A stretch of 64,000 nt of DNA from Perna viridis (GCA_037379345.1 CM074522.1:15686001-15750000); one strand, 5' to 3'; counted from the first letter of the stretch, positions 14,962-51,096 are shown. Numbers and translations: made by a program. The notes: generated by a model from the letters alone, not told the origin.

Positions 14962-17826
14962 GTAATATTGGTTCATTTAAATGTTTTCTGTGCCTGTTAT
15001 GTATAATAGTCATTTAAAAGTGAGTTAAAAATAAAAGTTTTGGCATTTGATAAATTTTTAGGTATAATTCAGTGTGGTTCTTGACAAATTTGAAAAGAAG
15101 AACTTTCGGTCTATTTTGACTTGCAATTTTTAAATTTTTCACCCTAGGTAAAGTTATTACTGACATAATTTTTCCTTTTGATACTGACATTGATTACCAG
15201 TAAATCCATAGAAACCTTAGTGAAAAAACAATGGCTATAAATATTCAGTGTTAAGTATTCAATTTAAGTGGAAACTTTTGTAAAGATATAAGTTTCAGGT
15301 GTCCTCAACTTTAAGACATGTATTTTTATTCTCACAATTGAAAGAGTCATCAACAAGGTCTGGGATAAATGATGTTTTTTTTCTGATTTCAGACAGGTAT
15401 AATTATTAACTCCCAGTTCCCTTGAAAGGCATTTCTTAAAGCCAAACACAAACTTGAGCACAAATGTATTCATCTTGCTGATTAAATTCTTCATAGCCTG
15501 GTCAGAATTATTTCATTTCCTGTAATATATGTTCATGAAATTGAATGTTTTTAAAATTCCTATAAAGAGACCTAGATAATTACTTTGATGGCAAGTTATA
15601 GAATTTGTTCCACACCAACAATTTGTGTGATTTATTTAGAAGGTTTCCTCCATTAAGGTTAGAATCTTTGATATTATGCTAACTGCTGGTACATACAATA
15701 TATGTTAAAACAAGACTGATTTCAAGGCTGATATAGGGGGATTTGAAATGTAAAAATTCTCTATCTTCTTAGGTTGTATTAAGAGGCGCAGAAAGGGATA
15801 TTTTGTTAACAGAGATAGGAAGCTTAATTTTAATGTTAATGACTTATTTAGAACCCCACTTTGCCCCTCAATTAACATACTATTAGGGATATTGGACTCT
15901 GGTTGATCAAGTTCGATAGATATGTATTCATTTTGATGTAAACATTTAAGGAATAATCTCAATCATGTGGTGCTATGCAGATTATTTTAAAGTGTGCACC
16001 ATGGGCATTGAGGTTATTTCAAATGACCAAAAAAATGTAATAGTCATTAATTTAAGTTACAAAATTCAACGAGTAAATCATTGAAAAAGAATAACAGTAA
16101 TAACTGGTCAGTTAGTATAATGAGATGATCGAAATTTTTTATCCAATCAGTAGCTATGATACTTCTGAAATTAAATTATAAGAAAATAACAAAATGTGCC
16201 ATGATGTACAACCCAACTCCTTTAGAAGTTGTAATTCCATTGTGGTGGGTAACTAATGGTATTAAAGGAGGAGGGTTGTAAATATGAAAGCTGCTGATGT
16301 TCAATTACTTGAACATGAAATGTATTAAATGCTAGAAATATCTCAATATACATGTAGAACATTAAGATTTGAGAAAGAAAAGTTAATTACTCATCATACA
16401 CAAAGTTGAAAGGCTCAAATATGGTTAATTTTGTTTTATCATGAAAAAAAAAAACAACCTAATTGCTGAATATTATTTTGGGATTCTATAAGAATTTTGT
16501 TGAAATAATTCCCACCTTTTATCTGATTTGTGTATGGTAATCAGATATCTTGAGGTATCTTTTTTTAACCAGTTGTATTTTATTCAAACTTAGAAACATT
16601 GCCAAATGACTTTATAATGAGTTTTTTAGGCTCCCATGGTAAGACTTTTATCAACAACACAGGCAGGAGATATCATCATCTCTCTAGGCTTAATGTGAAA
16701 AAAATATCTGCCAACAAAATTGTTTCTATGCAGTTTATTATTTGCCCTTTCTAATTTTTAAGTGTAAGTGTTTGTAAGAATTAGGCAAAATGGGGGAAAT
16801 CAGAAACATGCATGTCAAAACCCCACCAATCTGACCGTATACTTTCACTAGAGGATGCTTTCTCACTTTGAAAAGACCATTATTTGATCTATGCATCACT
16901 GAATTTGATCAGAAAATTTTCTATAGTATGTTAGAAAAATGAGGTTCTTGACAGAGTTAACTGTTCTTGAAATGTTCATTTTCAGTGCATTTCATTGAAC
17001 TCAATGCACCAGCATGATATGGAAAAATCTTCTGTTTTTTCCTTGATTCTGATGGTGCAAATAGTCAAATCAAACTTTCAAAATTGTAGGTTTTTCCATG
17101 TCATGTTTCACCCACTGCCTGATTCTTACAGAGACTGACACTCAATTTGAAACGTACATGAAAATATCAAGGGAAATATTCATGCTGCATTCTCATAGTC
17201 ATGGTCTCAGTAAGATACTAATTGCATCTTTATTTAAAGAATCCAGCCTTGCATGTCCAGTGAATAGTTCAAAATTCATCACCTCACATGAATTTTGCTG
17301 TTTGTATTTTTGAGTCACAGGAAATCAGAAGTGGAATTTGTGCATTTTGATTAAATCTGATATGTTGCATTGTCCTTAGATTTTGGCTAGCAATCTTTGG
17401 AATTAGATACTTACTGCATACTCATTTTGAAATTTCACCAACAAGCGAATGATACTAAATATAGCCTCTCAGTAAGATGCCTTATTTATCCTAATTTTGT
17501 TGTTAAAGCCATCCAAAAATCAGTTTTTGAGTTTCAGGAAATAGAAATTGGAATTTGTGCATTTGAGATTATTGAAGTAATCAGGTTGCCCTTACATTTA
17601 GCCATGAATGAGGCAAAACCATACTTAGTATTAAGTCGTCAATCATTATGTAAGAAAAATAATTATTAGATGTATTGTAACTAAAACAGACTTGTTTGTA
17701 CAAGTACATAATTGTTATAAGTATTTCCTTAACTATGTATTGTTCTAATTACATGTACATTGCTTTGTTTTACTTGTGTGACTTTAATGTGTACATGTAT
17801 CAAAATGGCTTCATTGATTTTTACAG

Positions 17827-17938
17827 ATACAAGTTTGCGGGATGGGCTTTTTCATGAGTACAAGAAATATGGTAAAGTAAATGCAGTCCAAGTGTCTGGC
17901 AATGGGGATGGTAGATTTGCCATTGTTAGTTTCAAAAA
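17827..17938 (+). CDS. SPEN: SPEN exon D, RRM2 (DTSLRDGLFHEYKKYGKVNAVQVSGNGDGRFAIVSFK)
   Basis: Acceptor ttttacag, donor AA|gtaagt; recognisable SPEN RRM2 sequence. Confidence 0.95.
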
Positions 17939-17958
17939 GTAAGTACACATATATTGGT

Positions 17959-18010
17959 TTCACCAAATGCAGCATGATACAATGGCCTCCAGTTGAACTC
18001 TGTCCACTTG
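17959..18010 (+). repeat. Left arm of a perfect 52-bp dispersed inverted repeat
   Basis: Exact reverse complement of 24926-24977. Confidence 0.95.
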
Positions 18011-19116
18011 GTTAAATAGAACAAGAATAGGTATGATGCATATACTGTACAATGCCATGTGAACGAAATAATTTAAGCCCAAGGCCACTCATAGGTTTTC
18101 AGTGAAAAACAAAGAAACTTATACCTCAGGGCAGACTGCAGCTGGCCACTAAACATCATTATACACAGGTACAGTGAAAAAAGTTGCCCCTATATACTCA
18201 AGTAACATAAAAATAAACTAAAGGAGAAAAGAAAAAAGACATACAGAGGCCAGGAATTCCTGACTTGGGACATCTGCAAAAATGTGGAGGGGTTAAAGCA
18301 TTTTGGCGTGGTCGCAACTCTCCACCTTTAAAATCTGCCCACTGTACAAAGTATGTGTATCCTGGTGTAATGTATTTGAGGCAGGCAAGTATTGGAAAGC
18401 TAATTGCAAGAGAGATTTTCTGAATTTAAAAAACTGACGGACAAAAGGAAATAGTGAGAAATTTGGCTTCAGTTTACTGGGACTCACACGGGTTGCCAGA
18501 AAGTGTAAGACTTGCAGTCCTATTCTTTAATTTAGTAATCTGTCATTGAGATGTACTTGGGATAGAAAAATCTCACCATTGAAATATTCATATTTAAAAT
18601 TGGTATTCTAGACTCCAAGTTGCATATACTATTGTGTATTGGCTTTATTCTTTATGCATGGATACATTTTAAAAATTACATGTATGTAACACCTGTTACA
18701 TATAACTAGTGATTTGCACTTTATGATTACTAATATTGATCGAACCAGAAAACATATTTGTAATATTTTTATAAAGTGTGTTATCTTAAAGATGAGAAAA
18801 AAAACATTTAATAAAAAACCAAGAACACGCAGTTTCAAAACTTAAAATTCCCTACAAGAAGAATCAAAGTGTATTTGGATTTTCACAAGCTCATTGTGAG
18901 TCAACAGGTTAATGCCTACATCTGGCCTCATATGAAGTAGGGAAGTCTTTCGCTGTTTTAACCAGTCAGACAAGAATGGTTTGACTGATAGTTTAGTAAC
19001 TTAGTAAACTGATGTATCATTTGTGTAAGTAGATGGTCATTCGCTTTACTGTGAATTAGATGTGTACCTCATTGTGTACCACGATCTTGAAATTCTTGAT
19101 TATTTTCATATATCAG

Positions 19117-19205
19117 GTCTGAAGATGCTCGTAAAGCCCTCGCTGCCTCCCAGGAAAAGCGGTTTTTTGGAACCAACATTCGAGTAGTGGAACATGAAGG
19201 GATTG
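19117..19205 (+). CDS. SPEN: SPEN exon E, end of RRM2 (SEDARKALAASQEKRFFGTNIRVVEHEGI)
   Basis: Acceptor tatcag, donor G|gtaggt; 89 nt, phases 2 and 1 fit both neighbours. Confidence 0.93.
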
Positions 19206-19247
19206 GTAGGTATCAATGTGTTAGTTCTCAAAGACACATATCGTTAG

Positions 19248-19719
19248 TCATCCTCCCAAGTCAGGGTTTTGAGTCCACCCTCAAAACCTCTGACATTACT
19301 CATTCATATTTAGCGGGTATCGTCTGGCGCCATCTAGTGTTACTTAAATTTAACCCAGATCCAAAATTCAATCAAATCACTCGTAATAGAAACTCTTTGA
19401 TGTAACTTACAAAATGGCTACACATAACGTCATTTTTTTTTAAAGAGAAGACTCTAAACAGAATCTAGTTACCATTTTTGCTCATATTGCATTTGTGACA
19501 TCATACAACTTTCAGTTACTATATTGGATCGTCCATTACCTCGTATTATTGTTTACCTTTCCACAGACAATTTTATGTTAAATCGATTTTTAATGGTGCT
19601 TGGCACCCGGAGAAGCAACCAATTTGAATTGGCAGGACAATACCCACTAAATATTAATGAGTGATGTCAGGGGTTTTAGGGAGCGAGGGTGGACTCAAAA
19701 CCCTGACTTTGGAGGATGA
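19248..19719. mobile_element. MITE with long (about 90 bp) terminal inverted repeats
   Basis: tcatcctcccaagtcagggttttgagtccaccctc pairs with gagggtggactcaaaaccctgactttggaggatga, and pairing continues inward; flanks tcgttag/ttgttag resemble a target-site duplication. Confidence 0.85.
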
Positions 19720-21057
19720 TTGTTAGTCTGTGTCTGTCTTGTCAGATTTAAGAGTTAGAAGCTTTGTTCTTATAGCATTGTCTTTGTTGTGTATTAAATC
19801 TGCTTTAATCTGGTAATTTGTCAAATTTTTACAATCTTTTAAAGACTTGCAATTGAGATCATGTATTCACCACATTCTTGGATTCACCTTCAGTTCAGTA
19901 ATCTCTGTCTTTAATTTCACCTTTCACATACATTGTACTCTGGTGTCATTACCAGTCTTCCTTTTCAAGCCTAATCTTTTCATTTTGATGTTAGAATTTT
20001 ATCAATTAGAAATCTTCATAGTACTTGATGTCTATAGAATCACTTAAGAAAATTCATTAAAGAGCCTTTTCATTTCATAGACAATACTGATTCAGTGCTT
20101 TGACAAAGACTATTGAAACTTTATATGAATATTCCCATTCTGTGTAAAAATCTTGCTCCTTTGAAGGTGCACCTCTAATGATTAAATTCAGATAAAGATT
20201 GTCAGCTGAATGGCTGACTTGAATAGGAGCTATATTCAATGAATCTCTCAATCGATGATGGTAGATTCTACAGAATTCTATATAATTGTATTCTATGCAT
20301 TTCTGGCAGCTCTTAGGAGAAAAAAATGTTGATTAATTTGAGCTTGATGTGTGACTAACGAGAGATATAATCTAGCATAGAGAGATATAGATGAATTATG
20401 TATAAACTTTGTTTATGGAAATAAGGCATAGGTCAAATTCAAGGTAGTGGGCATTACATTGAATTCATTGCATTTAGCCTTGTAATTAATTCAAATGAAC
20501 ATAGAATTAGAATTGAATTATTTAACAGATGCAATGCTGGAAAAAAGGGCTGGGTTTGGTCATGATCTGTATGAGGAAGGATTCTATATTTAGAATATGA
20601 CATTAGGGAAAATCCTTATTGAACTTTGACTCATTGGTCATTTAGGTAGAAAGCTGGACATTCAGAATTGAATGTTTTGAACAGATATTAAATAATACTA
20701 ATAAATAATATGTCTAAAAAGTTTAGTTGACATAACTTAGCAAATACTGATATAAACTGTGCAAAAGATCAGTATATTGTATATGGTTTTACATTAAAGG
20801 AACTAATAATGCCAAAAAACTTTTTTGAAATGCCTTCCCAGTCTCTATTACTCCCAAAGAAACAAATCACTTAATTCTTGCTAGTTAACAATGTGTACCT
20901 TTGATCATATTTGAAAAAAATAAGGCTTAAATAGTTTAAAAACCTTCTGATAACCACTTCTTTTTGAAAGTTTTTAGAATGCCAGGTTCATGGTTATCTC
21001 TTAAGCATGAAACTTTAAAAAAATGCTGTATGTTGTACCGCATATTCTTGTTTTCAG

Positions 21058-21206
21058 ATGTAGATGATGCTGAATTCCGTCCTCCAGAGGCTGAGCTTGA
21101 TGAACATCACCCTAAAGCAACGAGAACTCTGTTTGTTGGTAACTTAGAGAAAGAAATTACCATGGAAGAATTAAAGGTCATGTTCTCAAAGTTCGGTGAA
21201 ATCTTG
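21058..21206 (+). CDS. SPEN: SPEN exon F, RRM3 first half (EFRPPEAELDEHHPKATRTLFVGNLEK...FGEIL)
   Basis: Acceptor ttttcag, donor TTG|gtaagt; RNP2 motif LFVGNL. Confidence 0.95.
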
Positions 21207-22711
21207 GTAAGTATATTGAAAAATTGAATGCCACAAGTCTGAGCTAATACTTTAATTGTCTGTCTGTATGTCTACATTTTCTATTAATAGCCCTTATTGT
21301 GGTAAGTCGATGAGCATGTTCAGTATGCACTTCCACAAGGTAGGGCTTGTGTAGAATAAAAAGAATTTTCTAAGAAGAAGTATTGACTATCCCACTGTTA
21401 GCACAAAAGGGACTATTATATCTCTTACTACCTGGTGTTACATTCTGAAATGACTAAAGTATTACAATGGGAAAGAAAGGCCCTAAAAAAATATTCTTAA
21501 ACTTGTATAGAAAATAATATCAGTAGCTATTCAGTAATGATTTCATGACTGTAATTCCAGTCTGGAAAGCCTGGGTCACTTCTTTAACTTTTTTCTTCAT
21601 GCCTGTCCAATACTGGTAGGGGGCTTCTTCGTGAAATTCATCACTCAAAAAGTATTTTAACATATCAGTCAAATATTGTTCTAGAAATTAAACTCATATT
21701 TGTTAATTAAGAATCATTAAATACATATGTTTTTATTTTAAATCGTCTAATCTCCATCAATTTTTTTTTAAGTCCTCTAATCTCACATTAGTAGATTTTC
21801 TATACTTCCTTCTATACATAACAGTTTTAAGATATTTGAATACTTAAGATTGTGGGTGGTCAAATCTGTTAGTAAAAATTGTATCTTGATCAAATTTGCC
21901 TTTAAGGATGATATTTGTATAGATTATAGGATTATGATTTATATGCTTGTCATTTTACATATTTTTATAAGGATCTGGCAGTGATATGGTACTAAAAGTG
22001 TACATACATGTTATAGCTGATCATGACGTCATTAGATACATGTAAATGTACTGTTAAGTTTTGAACTAGCTTGTACATGTAGTAAACAAGGAAGAGAGAT
22101 GCCTTTTTTGGGAGTATAAAATTTCAATTTGAGCGTCTTATTTTTTTTTCAAAAAAAGCTACAATTTAAACAAATAAAAAAAGTTACAAGTTATAGATAT
22201 GTACATTGAAAAGTGAACCAAAATCTTGAATATGGTAAAATGTGGTTTAGAATTAATTTTGGTTGGTTACTGACTTATAATGTGCAAAAAATAAAGGTTT
22301 AGTAGACATGAAGTAAAAGCATGACTCTATTTTAATGCTCACACAAAGGGTTAGAATATCATTTGGTCAAAATTGAAGGAAGAAATTTCTACACAGACTC
22401 ATATGTCTACTATCAAGCAGTAATGTGTTCACGATTTGAATTAGATAGTCTGTCATATGTGAAGTAATTCCTACATGGGCTTGAATGTCAAAAAGTCATT
22501 TGTCGTGACAATACCACTTTATCTTGTTTGTTTTCTGACATGGTAAAATTCTAGTCCTTATTTATTTATGGTCTATTTCCACACTATTATACTGTCATGT
22601 CTAGAATTTCTGCTTCATTAAATGTATTGGTATGAATAGTGTAAAATTACACATCAGGTGTACATGGAATATCTTACGTATCAGTTTAGTGTTGAATCGT
22701 GTAAAAATAAA

Positions 22712-23250
22712 ATTTATATGTAGGTTTTTGGGTAATCTGAGAGCAGGTCTTGGTAGGGAGATTTATATGTAGGTTTTTGGGTAGTTTGAGAGCAGGTCTT
22801 GGTAGGGAGATTTATATGTAGGTTTATAGGTGGTCGGAGAGCAGGTCTTGGTAGGGAGATGTATATGTAGGTTTTTGGGTGGTCGAAGAGCAGGTCTTGG
22901 TAAGGAGATTTAAATGTAGGTTTTTAGGTAGTCTGAGAGCAGGTCTTGGTAGGGAGATGTATATGTAGGTTTTTGGGTAGTCAGAGAGCAGGTCTTGGTA
23001 GGGAGATTTATGTGTAGGTTTTTGGGTAGTCAAAGAGCAGGTCTTGGTAGGGAGATGTATATGTAGGTTTTTGGGTAGTCGGAGAGCAGGTCTTGGTAGG
23101 GAGATTTATGTGTAGGTTTTTGGGTAGTCAAAGAGCAGGTCTTGGTAGGGAGATGTATATGTAGGTTTTTGGGTAGTCGGAGAGCAGGTCTTGGTAGAGA
23201 GATTTATATGTAGGTTTTTAGGTAGTCAGAGAGCAGGTCTTGGTAGGGAG
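22712..23250. repeat. Intronic minisatellite, 49-bp unit x11
   Basis: Unit atttatatgtaggtttttgggtagtcngagagcaggtcttggtagggag; 539 bp = 11 x 49. Confidence 0.95.
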
Positions 23251-23544
23251 ATTCATTGATTAGTTGTTGATTTCTACTTGAATAAAATGAACTCATGATG
23301 TTCTGAAAAAAAAAAAAAAAAAATTGTGGTTGTAATGATTCACAAGTTTCCCATATTACCTGTGTAAGTACACCAACCCCTGCAAAAAAAAATCATGCAT
23401 CATAAGATCTAAGACTTCCAACTGCCAGAGCCCCCACTTTTGAATATATCATTGTTTAAGATGTCAGAGCTTCGTGATTTCCATTCATTAAGAAATTAAG
23501 AACCTTTTTTAAATACTTGGTACATGAATTTTTTGTCTTTACAG

Positions 23545-23670
23545 GACATAGATGTAAAAAGACAAGGTGCTATATCAGCCTACAGTTTTATCCAGTTCAC
23601 TGATATCCGTAGCGTTGTCAAAGCTCTGCGAGCTCTCGATGGTGAAACTATGGGTGGAATGAAACTGAAG
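23545..23670 (+). CDS. SPEN: SPEN exon G, RRM3 second half (DIDVKRQGAISAYSFIQFTDIRSVVKAL...KLK)
   Basis: Acceptor ctttacag, donor AAG|gtatgt; RNP1-like AYSFIQF; 126 nt, phase 0-0. Confidence 0.95.
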
Positions 23671-24925
23671 GTATGTAGACCCACCCCAAATAAAACATGT
23701 AAGACTCCTATATTAACTGTGGGTATATTTAGTACCTTTAAATAGGCTGTCAATGACAAAAGATGGTAGGTATAAATATTGTAGTTTTTCTAATTTGCTT
23801 GTTTATGCTCTTAATTTTTGACACTTTGAAATTTTCAACAGTATGAATTAATTATGATGTAGTCAGTAAGTTCTTTTTTCTGCTATGGTTCAGCAAGGAC
23901 ATTGTGCTAAAGACTCGTAATATTTCCATCTATATTAGGAATCTTATGAATTATGCACTCTCTGTCTTTTTATGGTCTCCAATAATCAGGTTCTCGTCTG
24001 GGATATAAGTCAAGTCTTCTTACTTGTCGCTCATGTATGTTTAGTTCATGTTTAATTTGATGGTAAGGGCATCTCATTGTCTGGTATGAAAAAAGAACAT
24101 TTGATATTATTATCTTTATCGTTACACCAAAGCAGATATGTTAGTAAGGGAATATGTTTATATGCCAGTGACTTTTAAGCAGGAAAGCTTTCATAGAAAT
24201 TCTGCAAGAGGTCTCTCTCTTGCTCACTATATGTAGTAGGTTTTGCATTAGTTTGCAGATTCTTTGTAGGTTCTATAAAAAATGAACAAAAACCAATGTA
24301 CAGAAATAGCCATTACACAAAATAACAGCTGTTTAGAACAGTTCTCTTTTCATGCTCTCACAAGGCTATAACTCGTGTCTTAAAATAACTTTGGATCAAT
24401 GCTGTACTGACATTTCTTATATCTTATACAGTGTTTTGTAGGTTCAAGGAACTAGACTAGACAATTTCTTTATAAAGGTGAAATTATCAGTCGATGTAGT
24501 TTTCTACTTAAAAATTGCTATTTACTACATTTATACCACACCAAATACTAAAATACATGTACTTTTATATAGGTTAAAATATCTGTTTGATACAGGAATG
24601 AATGAATTATTTATTTTTATTTGACTGAATAAATTTCAGGTCCAATTTTGAATTTTTCCATAGGATTCCTTATGGAAATCCTTACATGTACCTGCATTTT
24701 TCAATCATTATTGGAATATTTCTCACTGTTTTTGAATAACATAAGGTTAAAGGGACTATAACGGTCTTTTTTTTCGGGAGTTTTTTTTTTTTTTTTAAAC
24801 TTTTTTACTTCATTTGAATATCTAAATAGTATGCAATGCTGTATCCAAACCAGTTGTTGTGTCCACAATGAACTGTATGTCCCTATGTTGAAGTGTGTAA
24901 AAACTAATATTTTGTCCACACGTCT

Positions 24926-24977
24926 CAAGTGGACAGAGTTCAACTGGAGGCCATTGTATCATGCTGCATTTGGTGAA
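24926..24977 (-). repeat. Right arm of a perfect 52-bp dispersed inverted repeat
   Basis: Exact reverse complement of 17959-18010. Confidence 0.95.
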
Positions 24978-26027
24978 GTAATGTATTAATATCTACCTAC
25001 TGTAAAGTGTGGTGTCATAAATATTTTTACATTACATCTTATTTATAATGTATCATTTTAAAATTGTACAATTAAAGCATGGTGGTTTAGGATTGATGTT
25101 TGTTTAGAGTGTGAAAGTCAGGAAGGATTTAATTATGATATTTAATAAGACGGACATAAAAATGCATTGTATGTTTAATTCAGGATGTCAAAACAATTCT
25201 GATTGATCAGGGGTCAAAAGTGTATTTACTTCCTGTTCGTAAACTGTTTGTTGGAAACATTTCAAGTTCGATGTGGTAATCGACTGACATAGGGAAAGTT
25301 TGTGTATGGGAATGTAATTAGCGAGCTATGCAATTGTTATTTAAGTAATGATTATTGATTTGTAGATCTGAATAAGAATCCGTCATAAGATTTCAAATTC
25401 TGTGGTATACTTAATCATTTAGAATTCAATATTATACACTACCGACAGGATTTTATTTGGTTGTGGGTTTCTGTTTTTGTGCTTTATTTAGAACTAGTGA
25501 GATTTTATAAACAATGACAGGAATTCATTTCTCCGAAGTTTTAAAAGCATATAAAGAAGTGTATGCTGATATATAGCGAAATAGACAAGGTTTAAATCAA
25601 TACCAGTGTTTTGAGGTTTGGATGTTGTTATGCAATTTTTAACCTACTGCAAATTAATGAAAGAGAATTTATTTTTCATGAAATGAAGTTATACCATTTA
25701 GAATAAGATTTGGGTTGAATTAAGTGGAGAAATATAAAAATGTACTATGTCAAATATTAATGTTTAATTATCATAGGTGGCTGTTTAGGGTGTACAGCTG
25801 ATGATAGACTTGTATTTTACAGTTTTTCTACGCTAATGACGTATGTTATTGTCATGGTGTGAATTGTAGAATCAATAAACTGACAGTTGTGAAGATGTGA
25901 TACATGTAGCTGGACTAAACCATTTCTAATCGACAGAAAAGTATTTCGTATCATGTGTACTGACGAAGTTAGTGTGTAGAGAACAACTTGGTGGTTTATT
26001 TTCGAACAGTTGTTTTGTTCTTTTCAG

Positions 26028-26255
26028 CTTGGATTTGGGAAGAGCATGCCAACCAACTGTGTCTGGGTGGACAATTTAGCCGATAGTGTTCAGGAAAATT
26101 TTCTTTTCCGACAATTCGCTAGATATGGCCCCTTGACCAACATGGTTATAGACCGGGAAAGAGGGAAAGCTCTTGTCTTCTACAGTAGTCTGGAGAATGC
26201 TCAGTTTGCCCTTGGTGAAATGAGGAATCGCATCTTAAATGGACAGAAAATACAG
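26028..26255 (+). CDS. SPEN: SPEN exon H, RRM4 (LGFGKSMPTNCVWVDNL...KIQ)
   Basis: Acceptor ttttcag, donor CAG|gtagtg; 228 nt, phase 0-0. Confidence 0.95.
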
Positions 26256-29200
26256 GTAGTGTTATTACTTATAAATATGTTACTTTTTGTGAGATTTTAG
26301 ATGAACTTTTAAAAATTAGTGTTTGTTTTTTTTTTTAATACTAATGATACTCCAGACTTGAATCAATGTAAAAAGTTCTGTGTTGTGATTGTTAGATTAT
26401 TGCAGAAATGTCTAAATTCAACCCTTGCTTCAATGATATAGTGCAGGAAAGGAGTTGACAATTTTGCTGCTATAACCTTTTCAACATTTTAAAATCTATT
26501 AAGATGCTTCCAAAGGAAGTTTATTGGTAGAGAATCCTTAAATATTTAAATTAAGATTAGGGATCTGATAAACTATGGGTCTAAAATTATTTCTGCAAGA
26601 CAGGGGTTCAGACTTAATTTCAAGAGTAAACAACCCTGAAGTGTTTTTGGCATCCTAAATGAAAGGTCCACCACAAGAAAGTGAAAGGTCCATATAAAAG
26701 TTTATGTAAAGAATGGTAAGTCCAGCACCAACATGAATGGTGTATCAATGGTCTTACATCAGAAATTAAGGGTTGGGCACCTCTGACCTGACCTAATTTG
26801 AATCTTTGCAATATGGCAGAAAAGGGATTTCTTGTGCTTGAATTAACTCTGCAATTTAATGGTATCACAATGAAACATGTGACAAGTTTTACTAAAATTT
26901 GATCAAACCCATGAACTTGCAGTGTTTAAAGTTTCACCATTCCTATACTATTTTATATGCCAAATCATTAATTTCATGTCGGATATCACCTTTCACCCTT
27001 TTCTCTGCAATAGATAAAGCAATATATGTGGTGTTCTTATCACTCCCATTTGAAATGCACTGTCTGAAGCATAAAAGGAATGGAATCTAACTTAAGTTTA
27101 CAAGAACTGGATCAAGGTGTGATAAATACTGACATAAGAAAAGAGATATTATATATTAAGGTGATTGTTGATTCACTTTTTGTCTTTTGTAGAAAGTTAT
27201 GCCTTGTTTCCATGTAAACATTGACCAATTCAGAGTATTTTTATCTCTAAATACAGAGCTGTACGTCATTGCACTTTAGGTGGCATTTCGGATCATCTCA
27301 CACTACAAGTTAAAAACAAAATAAAATGAAAATACAAATACTGCTGTTAATTAAGGCTAGGTTATGTTTCTTGAAAGTAAGTTTTTCATTTTGAAATTTT
27401 TCTTATATGAGAGAGGAGGTTTTATATCCTTCCCGAAGAAACTTACCGGAAAATTTCTTAAAAAAGCTGCATATTCTGATGTTGAGTATGCCACTTGGAG
27501 AACGAATAAAATGGTTATGCCCCTTGTTTTAATAAAAATTGTAATTTAAACTGAAAATAATCACTCAAAATTTGAGTCAGAGTTGACAGAATTTTTGAAA
27601 TAACCTTGAAAAAGAGAAACTTGACCTGTCCCAGTAATCTCCTTCCAGCCCAAGTGTTAGTGAATTATGGCCAAGGATGGTTAAGGATTCCAATAAATTC
27701 TATTCAGAAAACCTCTCTTTAATTGTAGATCATGAAAAAAATAAGATAGCGTGGGAATTGGATTGGGTTTTCTATGATATCCACAGCTACATAACAACCA
27801 AATGATTTATGAATTTATTGTTTATGATGTAATCTTATGAACATGAACCATACAGTAAATATGTGATAATTTAGTTAGAAAAGCCAGGAGGCACGATTGG
27901 AAATAAAAAATAAGAATCTCCAATATCTATGGATGTTTCAGTAACAGAGAGAGCTGGAATGATTTAGCAATTATTTCCAAAGGTCTAAATTAAGGTCTTA
28001 ATTATCGTAATTCAGAAGGGACTTCTGTTGTTAATGGCCAAACTGTTGAATTCCTAGTTATAGTAAGCACTTGAAATTGATTTATATATAATATTGGAAA
28101 AAAAATGTGTGTCAAAATTCTTGATCGTAGTTTTCCCTTGGAGCCATCTTGAATCCAAAAATTCTATTTAGCAATGTTCATGTTAATTTTAGCAGTCTTG
28201 TATCTGATAACCAGATTACAAAAAATGTATTGATAATTTACATTACCCACTCTCCTTCCTCTTTTATGACTTGATTTACATTTTGACCATATACTACAGT
28301 TGGTGTGGGTACATTAGCCGACAGATATCTGGTTGGTAATCATGAAGTGGGATCAAAAATAAATATCTCAAATTTCATCTTTTTTAAAAGAAAACCATGG
28401 GTGGATACAGTCAAATCTGTCTTAATAACAACCTGTACTCAGCAATACCTGGTCTTAAAAGTTTATTATTAAAACATCCCTGTGAAGTGCATTCTGTGAA
28501 AAATTAACCTCCCTATATATATGACCCATGATTTCTCTCTCCTATGAAAGGTTATTCTGTGTTGTCAAACGGTGCAGTTAGACCAATTCTTCATTTTACT
28601 ACCATGTCATTGCCTATGTAATAGTGAAGAGAGAAAAATAACTAAAAACAATGAAAAGTCAAATACTTGTACAAAGAATTTGTCACTTTTATGGTACTAG
28701 GTGTATTGATTTTGTAGAAAGGAAGTGTCATTTTAGGCCAAAGATAATTAGTATAAGGTTAGAAGAATACTTTATTTTGCCAATTTTATTTCCTACAACT
28801 TAGATTATTGAAATAGCTTAGCCTATAACTTTTACATATGTCCTAATTGATGGACAAAATGCTTTTAATTTATATTAATTTTTTTAATTTATAACTGATA
28901 CTAACAAAAAAAACAACATAGAAAAGCCCTAATTTTTTTTGGTTGCCATTAAATTTGAGAGATATCCTTTAAAAGTTCATTATTTTGGTGACGTATTATA
29001 TATTGTATTGCAGAAAAAAACAACGTGCACGAACAACAGATATTTTTTTTCTTTGGCCTTATCAATATCAATATGTAGTTTGGTGTTATATTCCACATAG
29101 GTTATATTGCTAAGGTATTGATTGAGCTGAGGGATTTAGGAGTTTTTGTTCTCATTAATTTTGTCTATATTAGAAGTTTGTGACAAGTTTTGTCTTTCTA

Positions 29201-30887: not shown

Positions 30888-31759
30888 GTAAGATCGATTA
30901 CTGTTAGAGTATTAGTTATAGTAGTGTACTCATTTTCGTTATTTTTCCAGTGAATCTAAAATCACAAAAAAAAAAAAAGAAACAACCATGGAATTGACTT
31001 TTTAACACTATGATAACACTTTTTTTGAAACTCTGAAAATTGATACCTTTCAGTGTTCTAGGATTTTTCAGAAATTGAGGTTTCCCCAGGAAAAATCCAT
31101 ATAAAACCAACTTTCCCGCAGTCAGTGACTGCTTTCCTTACAAAACAAATCGTTACAGCATATGAAGTTTTCAACTTCCCACAGGAAACTGTACCTAACT
31201 TTCCCTGGGTAACGGGAAATAGGAATCCTGGAACACTGCCTTTGAATATTTTCAGTTTGAAGAATACGCCCAAATTAATACATTGTTAGTAAGCTATCTT
31301 TGTTATCATTGGTGTTGATTGGAATTTCGTAATTAAAGAAACACAGAGTCATAATATTTTCCACTTTTTATCAGAATTTTGTTTTTTCAAATCCAGATTT
31401 TACCATATCATTTCATTCTTTTTTTTTACTGTATGTATACTACCAATTTCTGCTTTTTAATTGGTTTTGCGAAATCATATCTGAATGAAAAATAAAGCTG
31501 AAGTAGTAACAAAATAAAATAGCTTGAAATAAAATAAGGATCGAAGGTGGAATAAATGCAAAAAGAAATATGTGATGTGCGTCTAAATTTCAGAATGATT
31601 GAATTATCTTTTTTAAAGATGCATGTTTGCATTAATTATCATCATTTATATGCCTACTGAACTATAAGGTTAAGCACAATACAGGAGACTGTTCACTGTA
31701 TAAAGAGTTTATTGATAGTAAGGACATACTTATTTCTTAGTGTTTATATTTCATTTTAG

Positions 31760-34700
31760 GTCATATGATGAATACAGTCAAGGAGGTGGAACCCCATACA
31801 GTGAAGGTGACTTTGAATCAGACCTACATGCTTATCGTACACAGCGGGAACGACAACGCAGCTGTAGTCCAGATCAGTATAGTGATGATGTGTACAGTGA
31901 ATCGTATCGTGAATATAAAGCAGCACGCTATGCTGAATACCCAGCTGGAAGTCCTGGAAGTGAGCCTGAGGATGGGTATTACGAACCTAGGGATAAAATG
32001 TACTACAAAGAACGCTATGTAGCAGGTTCAAGGGAAGCAAGTCCCGAGGAAACTTTTCCAAGTCGTAGAAGTTGGAGTCATTCACCATCACGGAGTCGTG
32101 TGAAGGATCCAGAAAGAAATACACCACCAACTCCTCTTGGTGGTGAGGACACTCAGGATTTCTCTTCACAGGAACATAGTCCGTCAGAAATGGATGGAAC
32201 ATATAGTGACTATAAACGTTCAGGAAAAGATGACTTTGATATCACTGAGGAGGATATTAAGGAATTACGAACTTCTAAACATAGTGCTCATAGAAAGGAA
32301 GCTTTGAATCGATCAGAGGAACGGTATGCTAGGAAACGTTCTTATGAAGATTCATTTACTCGAGACTCTATATCAAAGGAGGATGCTAATGTTCGTAAAA
32401 TAGACAGACAATTATCTCATGGGAGCTTATCAGACTCTAAAAGGGAATTATTTAATAGAATGAAAAAGTTACAAACTGAAGGTGTCAAAAGTGAAGGTCA
32501 GTTAAGCTCTGGAAGTAGTGATTCTGGGTCATTAACAGGAGGTGATTTGTCAAAGTTGAAACATGAGCGACAAATGTTGTTGGAAAAAATTAAACAGTGT
32601 GAAGACACAAACAATAGTGATGCTGATAATTTGGATTTAGAACATTTGAAAAAATCTAAACGATCGAGGCTAGATCCTTGGTCAAAAGGTCAAGGGTCTC
32701 AAAGGTTACAAAGTGAACTAGGAAATGTGACTCTAGGAGCTAAAAAGGACAAAACTTACGATGTGTCACAAAGTTATCGTAAACAAATGGAAGCTTTGAG
32801 AAAAAATGAAGAAAGAACTGTGAAAGAGGACTCTGTGAAATCTAAGAAAAATGACATTTTTGGTTACGAGGAACAAGACAAGGATGATTTATTACCACAA
32901 GGACTTGTGTCACCAAAGGACTTACCCCTTGGATTTGTTAAAAAACGTCGGAAGACAGATCTTTCTGAGGACATTAAAAGCCGTACCTATAGACACAAAC
33001 GTGAGAATGAGGACGAACGTATGTCTAGTGATAACGATGAAAGTGCTAAAACAGTGTTACGAACTGATTCCGTTGGATCTATGGGAAGTATACGGCATCT
33101 ATCTAGTGCACATTCTTCACCACGGACACCAATTGCAGGGCATCTGTCTCTAGAAAACTTGGAACATAAACTAAGTGAATCAGAACAATCTAACCCTGAA
33201 TCAGGGTCATTGACGTTTAAGAAAATTGATTCTAGTAAGAGAAGGAGTAAAGATGATTTACATTCTAGTCCTTTGATAATTCCGTTAGGAGAAGATGTAT
33301 TAGTGACTGATTTACATGATCCTCGCGTGCCAAAGGATAGTCATGAAGAAGAAATTAGTCTTCCATTACCTAAATTTGCAGAATATACTCCACCGATAAA
33401 ATTCAATTCACCACGTTCAGACAATTCTGGAAATGTAAAGGAAGATTCACCATGTTTTTCACCACCGAGTAGTGGAAGTAAGAATGAATCACCGCACTCG
33501 TCACCGAATGATACTATTTCCGAAGGATCTGGATCTCAAACTAACAGTAACCCAGAACAAGCTTACATACCACCAGAAGATACGTCAAATAATTCTAATG
33601 AACCAACTTTAGAGCCTCCCGAGGATAATGCTGAAATGGAAGTGAATAAAAATCCTCAAGATGGAGAAGTTGATGATGTGTTATCTGATAGTAGTGAACA
33701 TGATGACTTTTCACTTGCTGAACGTATTCGACAACTAGATGAAAAACTTAAACAGCTTCCAACAACCCAATCTTCTAAATTAGTAACAGATAACATTCCC
33801 GGTGCTAGTTCTATAGGCATTGGAATAACTTCTACTGCAACTCCACCAAGTAACATTTATAAATCTAAATATAAGATTAAAAAGAAACAAGATTCTATTG
33901 GCATTATGCCTGAAGAGACTGAAAAGGGTGAAAAACCTTCATCTGAAATTGTGAAAACTATGTTGAGTAGGAGTAGCATATTTGATCTGGATTCTAAGAG
34001 ACTAGAACAAATTAATGAGAAGTATTCTCCAAATGTTAAATCGGTTGTGTCAGGTTCTGAAGACTTGTCCAAAAATATGACATTACGGACTAAGGCTGAG
34101 GCTAAAGAAATGCCTCTGTCAACCTTACCAGGTTCCTTGGCAGGACGATTAGGGAATGGTGGATCATCATTCCCTACATTGTCTATAAATACTCAACCTT
34201 TAAATGTGAAAGTGGACGATAAGAATTCACCGCCGCTATCTCAGGAACAAAAAGCTGCTGACATGTGTTCATTCAATAATGACAATAGGATTTATAACGT
34301 AACTGATCGAATGGATTTATCTAATTCTGTTACATCTAATTATTCACCTAGGTTTAATTCAATAGACAATGGCTTAAATAAAATGAACTCCTCTACAAGA
34401 ACAATTGCTGAATCTGTAATCGAATCTACTGAAAAATCAGACAGTCATTTGGTAGGTGATTCTGCCATAAAATCAGATCCTCGGTTAAATTCCAAAAATA
34501 CAGTTTACAAATTGGACAAAACTGCTGATGAAAATATGGATTTAAATAATAGAAAACTGGACAATTGCTTAGAAAATAAACTTCGGCATCCTTCACCAAA
34601 ATTGACTGAAAATTCTAAAAGTGATGTTTTGGATCTTAATCATGGTAACACTTCAGGGAATAAAGTAATAAAGAGTGATTCAACTACCGAAAATATGGAT

Positions 34701-37700
34701 ACTTCTGCCCCAGTGTCGCTAGGGAAACGTAAATCTGAATTAAATTTGAAGAAGGATAAAGTGAAATCTATAGACAATAATTCTCCTACTGATTCTGAGA
34801 AGGATTTACTCAAGTCAAATGTTAAAAGTGGTTCTGAAAGTCCAGACACTAAAAAAGCTAAATTGTCGACTCCTGAAAAAGAGAAATCTGATAAATCTGA
34901 AACTGACTCTCCCACGCATAGTGATAGTGCTAAAACTGACAAAATGAAAAAAGACGGTGAGAAGAAAACTAAAGAGAGTAAGAAGAAGGAAAAATCAGAA
35001 TGTGATTCAATGAATAAGGACAAAGGATTTAATGATAGGAAAGACAAAGATCATGATGGTGACAAGGGAAAAAGTTCGGGAAAAGCGAGTGATAGTGATA
35101 ATAAAGTTGATGAAAAATTGGGGAAAGTGTCACCTGATGTTTTGAAGAAAGATTTGTCAGCCAGTAAACCAGAGAATGAAAAACCTGAACCACAAACTCC
35201 TTCTAAGAAAGATAATGATAAGAAAACTGAGCACTCTTCTTCAAAGAAGGAGAAGAAATCTGATAGTTCTAAAAATAAATCTGAGAGCAAGTCTGATAGC
35301 TCTCATAAAAAAGACAGTAAGGGTTCTAGTGAAAATAAAGTGAAAGATAAGTCAAAATCTAGTCATAAAACTAAAGAATCTAGTAAAAACAAAGATGATA
35401 AAACAGGAACTAGAGATGGGAAGTCAGCATCATCAAAGGTCACAAAGACAGGTTCAACTGAGAAGGTTGATCAGTCTAAAAATTCTGATGGGAAAGATCC
35501 AAAATCTTCAGAAAGTGGCGAGAAGAAAGAGGCTGAAAGTAAAACTGCTGAAAAGACCCATGATGTTTCAAAAGAATCGACTAGTGACTCAACTAAAGAG
35601 AAATCAGCTGAAACCACCAAGAAGAGCAGCTCATCAAGCAGTGAGAAGACAAAGTCAGGTGTTGATAAGTCAAAGTCAGATGGCTCTAAGGGCACTGATA
35701 CCAAACACAAGAAGAAACCAGAGAGCTCAGATCAACGCAAGAGCAAGACTGAAAGTTCTAAAAAAGATAAACTCACTGACAAGACAAAGCACTCAAAACC
35801 TAAAGAAAAATTAGCAGAGTCAAGTAAAGCCAAAGAGAAGATGGCTGATTCCAAGCCCACTTCAACTGAGAAAATAGCTGAGACTGAGGGTAATGAAATG
35901 AAAAGCCTTGAAGGTGTAGAAAAGACCAAATCAACAGATGATTCTACCAAGGTGAAAGAGAAATCAGATAATGGGAAACAAAAAGACAAGTCTGGAAATG
36001 GAAACTCCCAGAATTCCAAGGAGAAGTCTGAATATGAGAAATCCAAGTCAAGTGATACTGCTGTTAAGTCCAAGACAAAGCACTCTGACGGCAACCACAG
36101 CAAATCCAAGGTAAAGGAGGAGAAACTCAAGTCATCCTCACTTCATGGTGATAAGACCAAAGATAAATCCCACAAAGATTCTGGGAAAAAGGATGATGAC
36201 CAATCGAAGGCTGAGTCTAAAAAGGAGAACAATGGGGAAAACAAGAGCTCCAATGCAAACTCGAGCTCGACCTCTAGTTCAAATACAAATTCCAGTAAGC
36301 AGCCTTCAGAAACCAGTAATGCATCTGAAAAGAAAGAATCCAATTCCAATGGCAGTGAAAGCAAATCTGACTCGAAGAGTGAGAATAAATCTGAAAACAA
36401 GAATGACTCAAAAAGCGAAGGTTCATCTGGCAACACTGATTCCATTGTAAAGAAGTCAGACATGAAGAAAGATTCCTCCAAATCATCAAGTAAGACCAGC
36501 AGTAAAAAATCAACCAAATCAGAAAGTAGGTCAAGTGAGAAGAAAAAGAAAGATAAAGATAGAGAGGCGAAAAAGGAAGACAAAACATCACCGAAAGAAA
36601 AAGAGTCAAAAAAGCAACAACAACCCAAGAAAGAGGTTGAATTTGATTGGTCAGCTTGGATGGATGAACCTTACACATCAATGTATGATAGAGTCAAGAG
36701 GAAGTCAAGTGAGAAGGATAAAGAACGGGAAATGCAGGTTATGCAGAAGAAGTTTACTACCTTGTCAAAAAGTCGAGGCAACAAGAAACACTCTAAGTTC
36801 TCTGACTCGGATGATTCAGACTTCAGCCATGATAGTGCAGAGGAAACTGATGCATTTGAAGAAGAGAAGGTTGCCAAGCCAAGTAAAGAGGTATCATCAA
36901 CTCATGACTCTGCTCACAAAAGGAAGAGGTGTGTAATTGATACCTCCACCTCATCTGATGATGATGACAGTCAATTTTACAAGTCATTCCATAAAAATGC
37001 ATTTGGTACAAAAGATAAAGACAAGAGTAATGGGAAAACGAATAAGCACTCTGTCAATGACATCTACTCTTCAGACTCCTCTGAGACAGACATTGACTTC
37101 CCACCAATATCGCCGGCCAAGAAAAAGACAAAGAAGACCAAGAAAACAAAGAAGCCTGTTATTAACCATGATAGCGATAGCGAGGATGAACACACAAAGG
37201 AGAAACAACAGAAGAGAAAAGCAGTAACAACAAAACCTAAGTCCAAAAACACCCCCAAGAAGAAGTCAGAGGCAAAAACACCACAAACTGTCATTACTAC
37301 TGACACTCATGAGTCTGACTTGTATGATATTGACAGTGATATGGATCGGTTTGACAGGATCAAACTGAAAAACCAGAAGAAACTAACTCAGCAGAGAACA
37401 CCAAAACGAGGTGGAAGGTTAGAAACAACAACTGATGATTCTGATGTGAATTTCTCACCATCCAGGAAAAGCTTGCCAATTAAGAAGGAGGCTAAGCCTG
37501 TCAAGAAAAACATTTTGACTGATCCTCTGTTTGATATTGACTCAGACTCTAGTTTCCCTGACCTATCTCCTGTCAAGAATTCTATCGTTAAGAAGAATCA
37601 CACAGTAGAGACCAAGAAGCCAACTGTTACTGTTGGAACAGGTGTCATTGCCCAAACTATCCGAAATGAGGATCTTGGAGAAAAACGAGATGAAGGTAGG

Positions 37701-40700: not shown

Positions 40701-41628
40701 ATTAAAGAGGGTACCAGTGTTTTTGACTTCGATGACACAGAACCAGAGCTGAAAATTGACACGACATTGAAACCAACCAGACAAAAGAAGGGCAGGAGAA
40801 ACACCCAAGATAATAACCTTACTGGGAAAGTCATGACCCCAGAGGTGAAGACCCCTTGTAGCCAGAATCATATGATTTCACCTCTTGAGAGCCGTTGGCA
40901 GTGTAAGAAAGATAATGAGTCTGAGAAGCCTGGTAACCACCCACCATTGAAGCTGACTATAGCCTTGGCTCACTCCAGTAGCCTTACAACATCCAGTACC
41001 AACACTACATCAAATGTTATCAACTCTGCTACTATCATTGATAGTACAATACCTAGTATCAAAAACAAGAAAGAGCCAGAAACTATTACCAAACCTACTA
41101 TGCCCTCAGTAACTAGTTTTGTTGATTCTATTGTTTCCATGGTAAACAAGACAGTACCGCCAACAACAACAATGGCTCCATCTGTTGTCAGTAAATCTAT
41201 GAGCAATGTGGATAAGATCATTGATGATGTGTCCAAGGGTATTTTTGACTTTGCCAAACCACCACAACAAGTTGAAATAAATAAGGAGCACTTGGTTCAT
41301 GAAATGATCCATGGCTTTAATCTTAAGCCTGTTGATATGGGAGGCATACCTATGTCCATGCAACCATCAAAGAAACGGCATGCTGCTCAACACAATGGGG
41401 AACAGGAAATGATGCCACCTCCTCAGATAACACCTCCACCTAGTCACGAGTTCGTTCCTCCACCAAGGTCATCACCAAACCAGATCCAACCTGCTGTGTC
41501 ATCACCATTTGGCTCTGTTGTGATGTCCTTACCACAGGCTCAGCCAATCCACACGGTACCAGTAACAACAGTAACCAGTTCATCAGTGTTACCTGTTGGA
41601 ACAACTTCAATTAGCACTGCTGGTCTAG
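31760..41628 (+). CDS. SPEN: SPEN giant exon K (9,869 nt, about 3,290 aa), charged intrinsically disordered central region
   Basis: ORF 31740..41669; acceptor ttttag at 31758-59 and donor G|gtaatt at 41629; phases fit exons J and L. Confidence 0.93.
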
Positions 41629-42120
41629 GTAATTATAACATGCTAAGTTATTTCGTTTTAAATCTGTAAATTTTGGTTATTTTATGTTAGATTTTGTTAT
41701 CAAAAAGTTCTAAAACAAGACTTTTATCATGCTACTTTTAGACCCTGCATAAAAAACAAGAAAAAGGTAATAAAACCAACCATATTTGATATATTTTAAA
41801 ATCTTTAAAATTTGGTTTTGTAATATTTGTTCAATTATTAATAGTAAGCAGCTTGTTGACATCTGTGGAACTCCTATCTAAAAAACAACAGGTGTTGAAT
41901 ATATAAGATCTACATCTACTTAGTATTGAATTGATTCCTACGTCACTTTTAATTTTAAGGGCATTACCTTTGTGACATATTTTCTAGAAATATTTTCTTA
42001 CGTTAATATTATAGAGAATAGGGAGAAAAAGTGATTACTATTTTATCTGTTAATATTTTGTGATTTCTTATAAGGATGAAATTATCATTTTAATGATACA
42101 CGTCTTTATCTTTTTTCCAG

Positions 42121-46345: not shown

Positions 46346-46464
46346 TATGATATATATTAAAATAGATATACTCATGTATGAAACAGATACCAATGAAAGT
46401 AAAATATAAAAAAGCAAATGTCACTGTAACCAGCAAATGTTAATGTAACCAGTTTATTTTACAG

Positions 46465-51045: not shown

Positions 51046-51096
51046 TGTTTTTTGTTTTTTCATATTTACAAATTACCTGTCTGAAGTAGCTCTTAC

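What the first reader, a model, noticed from the sequence alone, without database searches (positions are those of the whole stretch)
17959..24977. Perfect 52-bp inverted repeat pair, 7 kb apart, bracketing three RRM exons: candidate RNA loop-out / NMD switch or circRNA element in SPEN
Seen: ttcaccaaatgcagcatgatacaatggcctccagttgaactctgtccacttg (17959-18010) is the exact reverse complement of 24926-24977. The arms are complex sequence with no TIR/TSD hallmarks, and I saw no third copy, whereas most other intronic repeat copies in the gene are visibly diverged. The left arm starts 20 nt after the exon D donor; the right arm is in the G-H intron about 1 kb before exon H. The enclosed exons E+F+G total 364 nt, not a multiple of 3, and joining D to H reads ...aac ttg gat...aca att TAG, a stop about 16 codons into exon H. 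Established: long-range intronic base pairing can drive multi-exon skipping and back-splicing, and RNA-binding-protein genes often self-regulate through unproductive splicing. Inference: the duplex could loop out RRM2-end/RRM3 exons to give an NMD isoform and/or a 364-nt circRNA, a dosage-control device for SPEN. A local hairpin tgtccac-acgtctcaa-gtggaca (24913-24935) overlaps the right arm; it could compete with the long-range duplex, or it could mark an origin by replication template switching.
Basis: partly seen in the sequence, partly recalled or inferred. Interest (0 to 1): 0.78.

Follow-up and report, generated by a model that had tools for sequence, protein, structure and literature searches.

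The report
Repeat-derived inverted duplicate in mussel SPEN
A perfect 52-base inverted repeat really does bracket three exons of a mussel SPEN gene, but one arm is a recent copied scrap of an old, very abundant dispersed repeat, so it looks like a young by-product of DNA repair that might disturb splicing, with no sign that it is a conserved regulatory switch.

Summary
The right arm lies inside a full, old copy of a SINE-like dispersed repeat ("family A", at least 1257 candidate copies, about 80% identity between copies). The left arm is an isolated 52-bp internal fragment of that family. It sits between the exon D donor and an old copy of a second repeat ("family B"). Both arms share 8-9 differences from the family majority, five of them rare, and no third copy exceeds about 87-90% identity. 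So the left arm is a late local copy of the right-hand element, not an independent insertion. Perfect identity is what a young copy would show and does not call for selection.

Four annotated bivalve SPEN loci and one 12.9-kb mollusc contig have no exon-bracketing inverted repeat. Mytilus californianus lacks the D-E intron altogether.

The duplex is predicted to be stable (-102 kcal/mol, and present in the global fold). Published work shows that 30-40-nt intronic inverted repeats can drive back-splicing and exon skipping, so an effect on splicing is plausible. Low to moderate interest.

The parts
17959..18010 (+). Left arm. An isolated 52-bp fragment of repeat family A, in family sense orientation, starting at intron position +21 of the D-E intron.
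   Evidence: Exact match to the reverse complement of the right arm. There is no further family-A similarity on either flank or anywhere else in the window. It shares all 8-9 departures of the right arm from the family majority.
24926..24977 (-). Right arm. An internal segment of a full family-A copy in the G-H intron.
   Evidence: Family similarity continues on both sides of the arm.
24630..24992 (-). Full copy of dispersed repeat family A. It is SINE-like, with an internal A-run at 24781-24800, and is the donor of the 52-mer.
   Evidence: At least 1257 first-look candidates genome-wide; 40 scored at 72-85% identity. It is 11-16% diverged from the majority of 23 copies.
18016..18355 (+). Copy of dispersed repeat family B. 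It starts at the family's canonical 5' end about 5 nt after the left arm and is truncated at its 3' side.
   Evidence: At least 4033 first-look candidates; 40 scored at 77-85% identity. Copies elsewhere have unrelated upstream flanks. It is 10-14% diverged from the family majority.
24913..24935 (-). Local hairpin TGTCCAC-N9-GTGGACA. The 3' breakpoint of the duplicated 52-mer falls in its loop.
   Evidence: Read directly from the sequence. The same stem is present in the family-A majority sequence.
17827..17938 (+). SPEN exon D (part of the second RRM), 112 nt, ending two bases into a codon.
   Evidence: It is 94% identical at protein level to Mytilus californianus.
19117..19205 (+). SPEN exon E, 89 nt.
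21058..21206 (+). SPEN exon F, 149 nt (first half of an RRM).
   Evidence: Pfam RRM_1 positions 1-25, E 7e-6.
23545..23670 (+). SPEN exon G, 126 nt (second half of the same RRM).
   Evidence: Pfam RRM_1 positions 29-70, E 2e-5.
26028..26255 (+). SPEN exon H, 228 nt (the next RRM).
   Evidence: Matches human Msx2-interacting protein (PDB 4P6Q) residues 174-248, E 3.6e-27. Pfam RRM_1, E 1e-7.

Best explanation
The pair is a young, repeat-derived local duplication.

The donor is an old copy of a very abundant SINE-like repeat (family A). It lies on the minus strand of the G-H intron of a mussel SPEN gene. The organism is very probably Perna viridis.

Late in that copy's life, 52 bp from its interior were copied, or captured as a fragment, and placed in inverted orientation 7 kb upstream. 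The landing site is 20 nt inside the D-E intron, right beside the end of another old repeat (family B).

The most likely process is repair of a DNA break, or a replication template switch, that used nearby sequence. This step is inferred. One breakpoint lies in the loop of a hairpin within the donor.

The perfect identity reflects youth, not selection.

As a side effect, the pre-mRNA can now form a 52-bp duplex that loops out exons E-G. By the known inverted-repeat mechanism this may cause some back-splicing (a 364-nt circle) or skipping (a frameshifted transcript that would be degraded) in the fraction of transcripts whose D-E intron is still present when the right arm is made. That effect is predicted, not shown, and nothing indicates that it is a selected regulator.
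For: - The right arm is embedded in a full family-A copy. Family similarity runs through both arm boundaries.
- The left arm has no family similarity beyond 52 nt, and no other family-A piece exists in the window.
- The 52-mer differs from the majority of 23-26 family copies at 8-9 positions, five of them rare or unique. Both arms share all of them. The best other copy matches 45 of 52 positions.
- Within the right copy, the arm is as diverged from the family majority (16%) as the rest of the copy (11.4%). So the copy was made after most of that divergence had accumulated. Zero differences over 104 nt place the event within roughly the last quarter of the element's residence under neutrality.
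- The adjoining family-B copy is also old (10-14%), so the two were not inserted together.
- No equivalent architecture exists in Mytilus, Saccostrea, Pinctada or Mactra, or in the 12.9-kb Logan contig L047. The short contigs L043-L045 show only a short D-E intron with no similarity to the window's.
- Duplex energy is -101.7 kcal/mol, and all 52 pairs appear in the global minimum-energy fold.
- The mechanistic precedent comes from PMC4201285 and PMC8330042.
Against: - No reads could be examined. Neither the presence of the left arm in other individuals nor any splice product was checked.
- No close relative (same genus) was reachable, so youth is inferred from sequence identity alone.
- There is no microhomology at either junction. 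That does not favour microhomology-mediated template switching and leaves the DNA-level mechanism open.
- A perfect 52-bp match would also be seen if both arms were under strong constraint.
Confidence: 0.7

Rival explanations
1. The pair is a selected, lineage-specific splicing device. The duplex loops out exons E-G to give a degraded frameshifted isoform and/or a 364-nt circular RNA that tunes SPEN dosage.
For: - The geometry and frame arithmetic are correct.
- The duplex is strongly predicted.
- It is the only significant cross-exon inverted repeat in the RRM region.
- With the duplex formed, the D donor lies about 1.07 kb from the H acceptor, comparable with the normal 1.18-kb D-E intron.
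- There is a mechanistic precedent.
Against: - The arms are fragments of an abundant repeat.
- Perfect identity with sharp edges is what a recent copy gives. The arm shows no early 'freezing' relative to the rest of the donor.
- No counterpart exists in five other mollusc SPEN loci that span D to H, and the D-E intron is absent in Mytilus.
- The arms lie 1.1-1.25 kb from the E acceptor and G donor.
- The D-E intron may be spliced out before the right arm, 7 kb downstream, is transcribed. Liang and Wilusz note that the upstream intron must be slow to splice.
Confidence: 0.07
2. The left arm is an assembly or polishing artefact: 52 bp wrongly introduced into the D-E intron of a long-read assembly.
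For: - There is no independent sequence of this spot.
- If this is the published P. viridis genome, the assembly was built from noisy long reads polished with short reads.
Against: - Known assembly errors do not typically insert a clean 52-bp inverted internal fragment from 7 kb away with both flanks intact.
- The surrounding exon, splice site and family-B copy are all colinear and undisturbed.
Confidence: 0.05
3. Two old, independent family-A insertions were homogenised over 52 bp by gene conversion, and the rest of the left copy was lost.
For: Gene conversion between nearby inverted repeats is well known (established knowledge). It would explain the shared private variants.
Against: - No residual family-A similarity flanks the left arm on either side, even at relaxed settings.
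- The 3' flank is the canonical 5' end of family B, and the 5' flank is the splice-donor region.
- This idea needs two deletions that coincide exactly with the ends of the conversion tract.
Confidence: 0.05
4. The left arm is a chimeric retroposition product. It was added at the 5' end of the family-B element when the reverse transcriptase switched template to a family-A transcript.
For: The 52-mer abuts the canonical 5' terminus of the family-B copy, about 5 nt away, and lies on the same strand.
Against: - The family-B copy is 10-14% diverged from its family, yet the 52-mer has zero differences from the right arm. About 10 differences would be expected if they were the same age.
- The fragment does not start at the family-A 5' end, because family similarity continues about 10-15 nt further upstream in other copies.
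- The SPEN pre-mRNA carries the wrong strand to serve as the template.
Confidence: 0.03

Closest known systems
Intronic inverted repeats (Alu-type, 'reverse complementary matches') that drive back-splicing and skipping of the bracketed exons
   Same: Transposon-derived complementary sequences lie in the introns on either side of a block of exons with normal splice sites. The arm length (52 nt, perfect) exceeds the 30-40 nt shown to be sufficient (PMC4201285). The same matches are known to promote both the circle and the skipped linear RNA (PMC8330042).
   Different: - One arm here is a 52-bp secondary fragment rather than a second full repeat insertion.
- The arms are 1.1-1.25 kb from the back-splice sites and 6.9 kb apart.
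- No circular or skipped transcript has been observed.
Autoregulatory unproductive splicing (alternative splicing coupled to nonsense-mediated decay) in RNA-binding-protein genes
   Same: The gene encodes an RNA-binding protein. Skipping E-G would shift the frame and create an early stop upstream of many exon junctions.
   Different: - Known cases rest on deeply conserved elements. Here there is no conservation in five other mollusc loci that span D to H.
- There is no evidence that the isoform exists or responds to SPEN protein.
Templated or captured-fragment insertions at repaired DNA breaks, and replication template switches that create local inverted duplications
   Same: A short stretch is copied from a nearby donor on the same chromosome, in inverted orientation, with sharp edges. 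One breakpoint lies in a hairpin loop of the donor.
   Different: - Polymerase-theta templated insertions are usually shorter and copied from within tens of bases of the break.
- No junction microhomology is seen here.
- The mechanism is inferred from a single event.

Membership tests
Inverted-repeat-driven circRNA / exon-skipping architecture | Complementary sequences in the two introns flanking the affected exons | tested here: met
   The arms lie in the D-E and G-H introns.
Inverted-repeat-driven circRNA / exon-skipping architecture | Pairing of at least about 30-40 nt that is predicted to form | tested here: met
   52 perfect pairs, -101.7 kcal/mol, all present in the global minimum-energy fold of 8.4 kb. 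The length threshold comes from PMC4201285.
Inverted-repeat-driven circRNA / exon-skipping architecture | Back-splice (G donor to E acceptor) or skipping (D to H) junctions present in RNA | not testable with these tools
Inverted-repeat-driven circRNA / exon-skipping architecture | Loss of the product when an arm is mutated, and rescue by a compensatory change | not testable with these tools
   This is a bench experiment.
Autoregulatory unproductive splicing in RNA-binding-protein genes | The alternative isoform carries a premature stop upstream of later exon junctions | tested here: met
   In silico only. The D-H join gives TAG as the 18th codon, and E+F+G = 364 nt.
Autoregulatory unproductive splicing in RNA-binding-protein genes | The regulatory element is conserved among related species | tested here: not met
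   There is no exon-bracketing inverted repeat in Mytilus californianus, Saccostrea echinata, Pinctada imbricata or Mactra antiquata, or in the 12.9-kb contig L047. The short contigs L043-L045 do not reach exon H. Mytilus has no D-E intron. No congener was available.
Autoregulatory unproductive splicing in RNA-binding-protein genes | Isoform level responds to the protein's own abundance | not testable with these tools
   This is a bench experiment.
Dispersed repeat family A (SINE-like) as an ordinary independent insertion | The copy extends over the family's length, or to one of its ends, with family-level divergence | tested here: met
   This holds for the right arm's element only: about 24992 to 24630, 11-16% from the majority.
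Dispersed repeat family A (SINE-like) as an ordinary independent insertion | The left arm is an independent insertion of the family | tested here: not met
   It is a 52-bp internal fragment with no family flanks. It shares all private variants of the right copy.
Microhomology-mediated template switch or templated insertion | Donor nearby on the same chromosome and sharp copy boundaries | tested here: met
   The donor is 6.9 kb away, and identity drops from 100% to none at both edges.
Microhomology-mediated template switch or templated insertion | Short microhomology at the junctions | tested here: not met
   The bases next to both junctions differ between target and donor: T versus C at the 5' side and G versus A at the 3' side. 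This favours fragment capture or a blunt join, or later change.
SPEN / SHARP / split ends gene family | N-terminal RRMs, a very large central exon and a C-terminal SPOC domain | tested here: met
   RRM hits on exons F, G and H. Exon H matches PDB 4P6Q at E 3.6e-27. There is a 3309-aa open frame at 31740-41669. SPOC lies at window 46462-46743. The best relatives are named msx2-interacting protein / split ends of Mytilus.

The most novel reading that the evidence does not exclude
A chance 52-bp scrap of a repeat, captured next to a splice donor, has been recruited in the Perna lineage as a new switch. The switch would loop out the exons E-G (end of RRM2 and RRM3) of SPEN, yielding a 364-nt circular RNA and/or a degraded isoform that sets SPEN dosage. 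That would be a very young regulatory element caught at birth.
Probability: 0.06. Interest if true: 0.6.

Novelty: new member of a known kind. Interest (0 to 1): 0.25.

Why it matters
If the duplex acts in vivo, this would be a clean natural example outside vertebrates, flies and worms of a minimal inverted repeat creating a circular RNA or a skipped isoform. It is clean because one arm is only 52 bp and has no competing partners in the gene. It would also show how short fragments copied during DNA repair, not only whole transposon insertions, can create such architecture.

As it stands, the value is mostly corrective. The sequence is repeat-derived and young, and it is not conserved in the relatives available, so it should not be read as a conserved SPEN control element.

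Other first readers flagged similar exon-bracketing inverted repeats elsewhere in this repeat-rich genome (s1-759863, s1-751583, s1-755897, all unchecked). That suggests such pairs are a recurrent feature of the genome rather than something special to SPEN.

Tried and rejected
1. Sequencing-run search for DNA and RNA reads over 17800-23799. 
2. Sampling 800 kb of the genome to estimate a background rate of perfect local repeats. The only baseline is the 64-kb window, which holds one perfect inverted pair of 28 nt or more.
3. Exact-protein look-ups of small open frames across each arm, to find independent contigs. Nothing was on record.
4. A word search with the exon D open frame, to find same-species or congener contigs. 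It returned only distant molluscs at 56-79% identity.
5. A metagenome scan for a 30-nt core of the arm. No match.
6. An Rfam scan of 17000-26500. Nothing meaningful.
7. The idea that the left arm is the remnant of a full family-A copy split by the family-B insertion. Rejected, because no family-A sequence follows the family-B copy.
8. The idea of co-insertion with family B. Rejected on age.
9. The idea that the D-E intron is a recent gain. Rejected, because it is present in oysters, a pearl oyster, a clam and two other contigs, so Mytilus lost it.
10. A search with a joined (spliced) D-to-H protein model was left out. Exons were searched one by one by reference.
Full report
**Observation**

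The pair is real. Window 17959-18010 on the plus strand is the exact reverse complement of 24926-24977: 52 nt, 100% identity, 6915 nt between the arms. Identity stops abruptly at both edges. A 30-nt core occurs exactly twice in the window, against none in 100 shuffles. It is the only perfect inverted match of 28 nt or more in the 64-kb window.

**Gene and organism**

The gene is a SPEN (SHARP / split ends) orthologue.
- Exons F and G together, and exon H alone, hit the RRM_1 model.
- Exon H matches human Msx2-interacting protein (PDB 4P6Q) residues 174-248 at E 3.6e-27.
- A 3309-aa open frame lies at 31740-41669.
- A SPOC domain lies at window 46462-46743.
- The nearest named proteins are Mytilus 'msx2-interacting protein-like / split ends-like', at 58-60% identity over the giant exon.

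The genome has 723.1 Mb in 46 sequences and the window is about 34% G+C. The published Perna viridis assembly has 723.5 Mb, 15 chromosomes plus 31 contigs, and 32.9% G+C (PMC11358141). The species assignment is my inference from this match.

**Exon arithmetic**

| Exon | Coordinates | Length |
|---|---|---|
| D | 17827-17938 | 112 nt |
| E | 19117-19205 | 89 nt |
| F | 21058-21206 | 149 nt |
| G | 23545-23670 | 126 nt |
| H | 26028-26255 | 228 nt |

All five have AG/GT boundaries. E+F+G = 364 nt. A D-H join reads AAC TTG GAT ... ACA ATT TAG.

**What the arms are**

It is not.

- A 501-bp query around the right arm found at least 1257 first-look candidates in the genome. The 40 scored were 72-85% identical.
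- The family ("A") runs on the minus strand from about 24992 to about 24630, with an internal A-run at 24781-24800.
- Aligned copies show that family similarity continues on both sides of the right arm. A conserved AATAAAAAGC lies upstream, and the hairpin and the rest of the element lie downstream. The right arm is therefore an internal segment of an ordinary full copy.

The left arm has no family-A similarity beyond its 52 nt.
- Its 5' flank is the splice-donor region.
- About 5 nt after its 3' end begins the canonical 5' terminus of a second abundant repeat ("B"), at about 18016-18355. Family B has at least 4033 candidates at 77-85% identity. Its copies elsewhere have unrelated upstream flanks.
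- A relaxed search found no other family-A piece anywhere in the window.

**Direction and age of the copy**

- Against the majority of 23-26 family copies, the 52-mer differs at 8-9 positions. Five of these are rare or unique in the sample, and both arms share every one.
- The best other genomic copy is 87-90% identical, or 45 of 52 positions in the alignment. Family copies differ from the majority by a mean of 8.2 of 52 positions.
- Two independent insertions cannot give this pattern. One arm was copied from the other. Because only the right arm has its family context, the right-hand element is the donor.
- Within that element, the arm is 16% diverged from the majority and the rest is 11.4% diverged. 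The arm was therefore not frozen early.
- With zero differences over 104 nt, a neutral copy would have to date from roughly the last quarter of the element's residence.
- The family-B copy is itself 10-14% diverged, so the 52-mer did not arrive together with it.

**Mechanism of origin (inferred)**

The pattern is a short piece from a donor 7 kb away on the same chromosome, inserted in inverted orientation with sharp edges. This points to break repair with a captured or templated fragment, or to a replication template switch.
- The 3' breakpoint lies 3 nt into the loop of the donor's 7-bp hairpin. This is suggestive of a stall or a cut there.
- There is no microhomology at either junction. This does not favour microhomology-mediated models.

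I cannot resolve this further from one event.

**RNA consequences (predicted)**

- The two arms pair with -101.7 kcal/mol. In a minimum-energy fold of the whole 8429-nt D-to-H pre-mRNA, all 52 pairs form.
- No other family-A head segment exists in the window to compete.
- The only other inverted pair in the D-to-H region lies within a single intron.
- Published mutagenesis shows that 30-40-nt inverted repeats in flanking introns suffice for circularisation. The same work notes that the upstream intron must be slow to splice (PMC4201285).
- In C. elegans, such matches promote both the circle and the skipped linear RNA (PMC8330042).
- With the duplex formed, the D donor is about 1.07 kb from the H acceptor. 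The G donor and E acceptor are joined through about 2.4 kb.

Some back-splicing or skipping is therefore plausible. One consideration against efficiency is my own inference: the 1.18-kb D-E intron, which carries the left arm, may often be removed before the right arm, 7 kb downstream, is transcribed.

**Comparative evidence**

I located exons D-H in four annotated bivalve SPEN loci, and in a fifth locus on a Logan contig.
- Mytilus californianus (L039) has exons D and E fused with no intron.
- Saccostrea echinata (L040), Pinctada imbricata (L041) and Mactra antiquata (L042) keep a short D-E intron.
- Contigs from two further unidentified molluscs also keep a short D-E intron that is unrelated in sequence to the window's intron. 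They are L043-L045, which are near-identical to each other and reach only exons D and E, and L047, which spans D to H.
- None of the four annotated loci, nor L047, has an inverted repeat bracketing these exons. In Saccostrea the G-H intron is only about 94 nt.

These species are all distant from the window's species. They show that the architecture is not an ancestral SPEN feature. They cannot date it within Perna.

**What could not be done**

No DNA reads (artefact, polymorphism) or RNA reads (junctions, editing) were examined, and read laying was not used.
- Exact look-ups and a metagenome scan found no independent copy of either arm.
- A search with a joined, spliced protein model was left out.

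**Verdict**

The structural potential is real and fits a well-known mechanism. The element is a young, repeat-derived secondary duplication, with no sign of conservation or selection.

Three other first-reader notes report exon-bracketing inverted repeats elsewhere in this genome (unchecked). They hint that such pairs recur in this 45%-repeat genome.

I rate the 'young by-product' reading at about 0.7, a selected switch at about 0.07, and an assembly artefact at about 0.05.

Noticed in passing
window 17939-19116; L039:32161-32361: The D-E intron of SPEN (1178 nt here) is absent in Mytilus californianus, where exons D and E are one exon. It is present but short (about 250-800 nt) in Saccostrea, Pinctada, Mactra and contigs from two unidentified molluscs. 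This is a lineage-specific intron loss in Mytilus.
   Followed up: partly
window 22614-23367: A tandem array with a 49-bp period and about 15 units lies in the F-G intron. The central units are 90-92% alike.
   Followed up: no
window 19232-19324 and 19636-19735: An 84% inverted repeat of about 85-90 nt, with arms about 400 nt apart, lies inside the E-F intron. It looks like the two ends of a small non-autonomous transposon.
   Followed up: no
window 53923-56453: A higher-order repeat. Blocks of 54-bp units recur every 635 bp or so, up to 100% identical between blocks. A run of plus-strand open frames of 157-228 aa overlaps it (53996-56376).
   Followed up: no
window 57426-57881 and 59136-59602: Two direct repeats of about 460 bp, 98-100% identical and 1.7 kb apart. 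The layout resembles a small element with long terminal repeats, or a recent local duplication.
   Followed up: no
window 51057-51344 and 61544-61676: Inverted repeats of 57-78 nt at 91-95% identity, 10.3-10.4 kb apart, downstream of SPEN. There is a further local copy at 51268-51344.
   Followed up: no
window 18016-18355: Repeat family B is very abundant (at least 4033 candidates) and has a sharply defined 5' end (ATATAACAAGAATAGG). Copies elsewhere extend at least 120 nt further 3' than the window's copy. The family was not classified.
   Followed up: partly
L038 versus window 31677-41687: A Logan contig from run SRR26215654 covers the giant SPEN exon colinearly at 99.78% identity (19 mismatches, 1 gap). 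It is presumably from another individual of the same species.
   Followed up: partly
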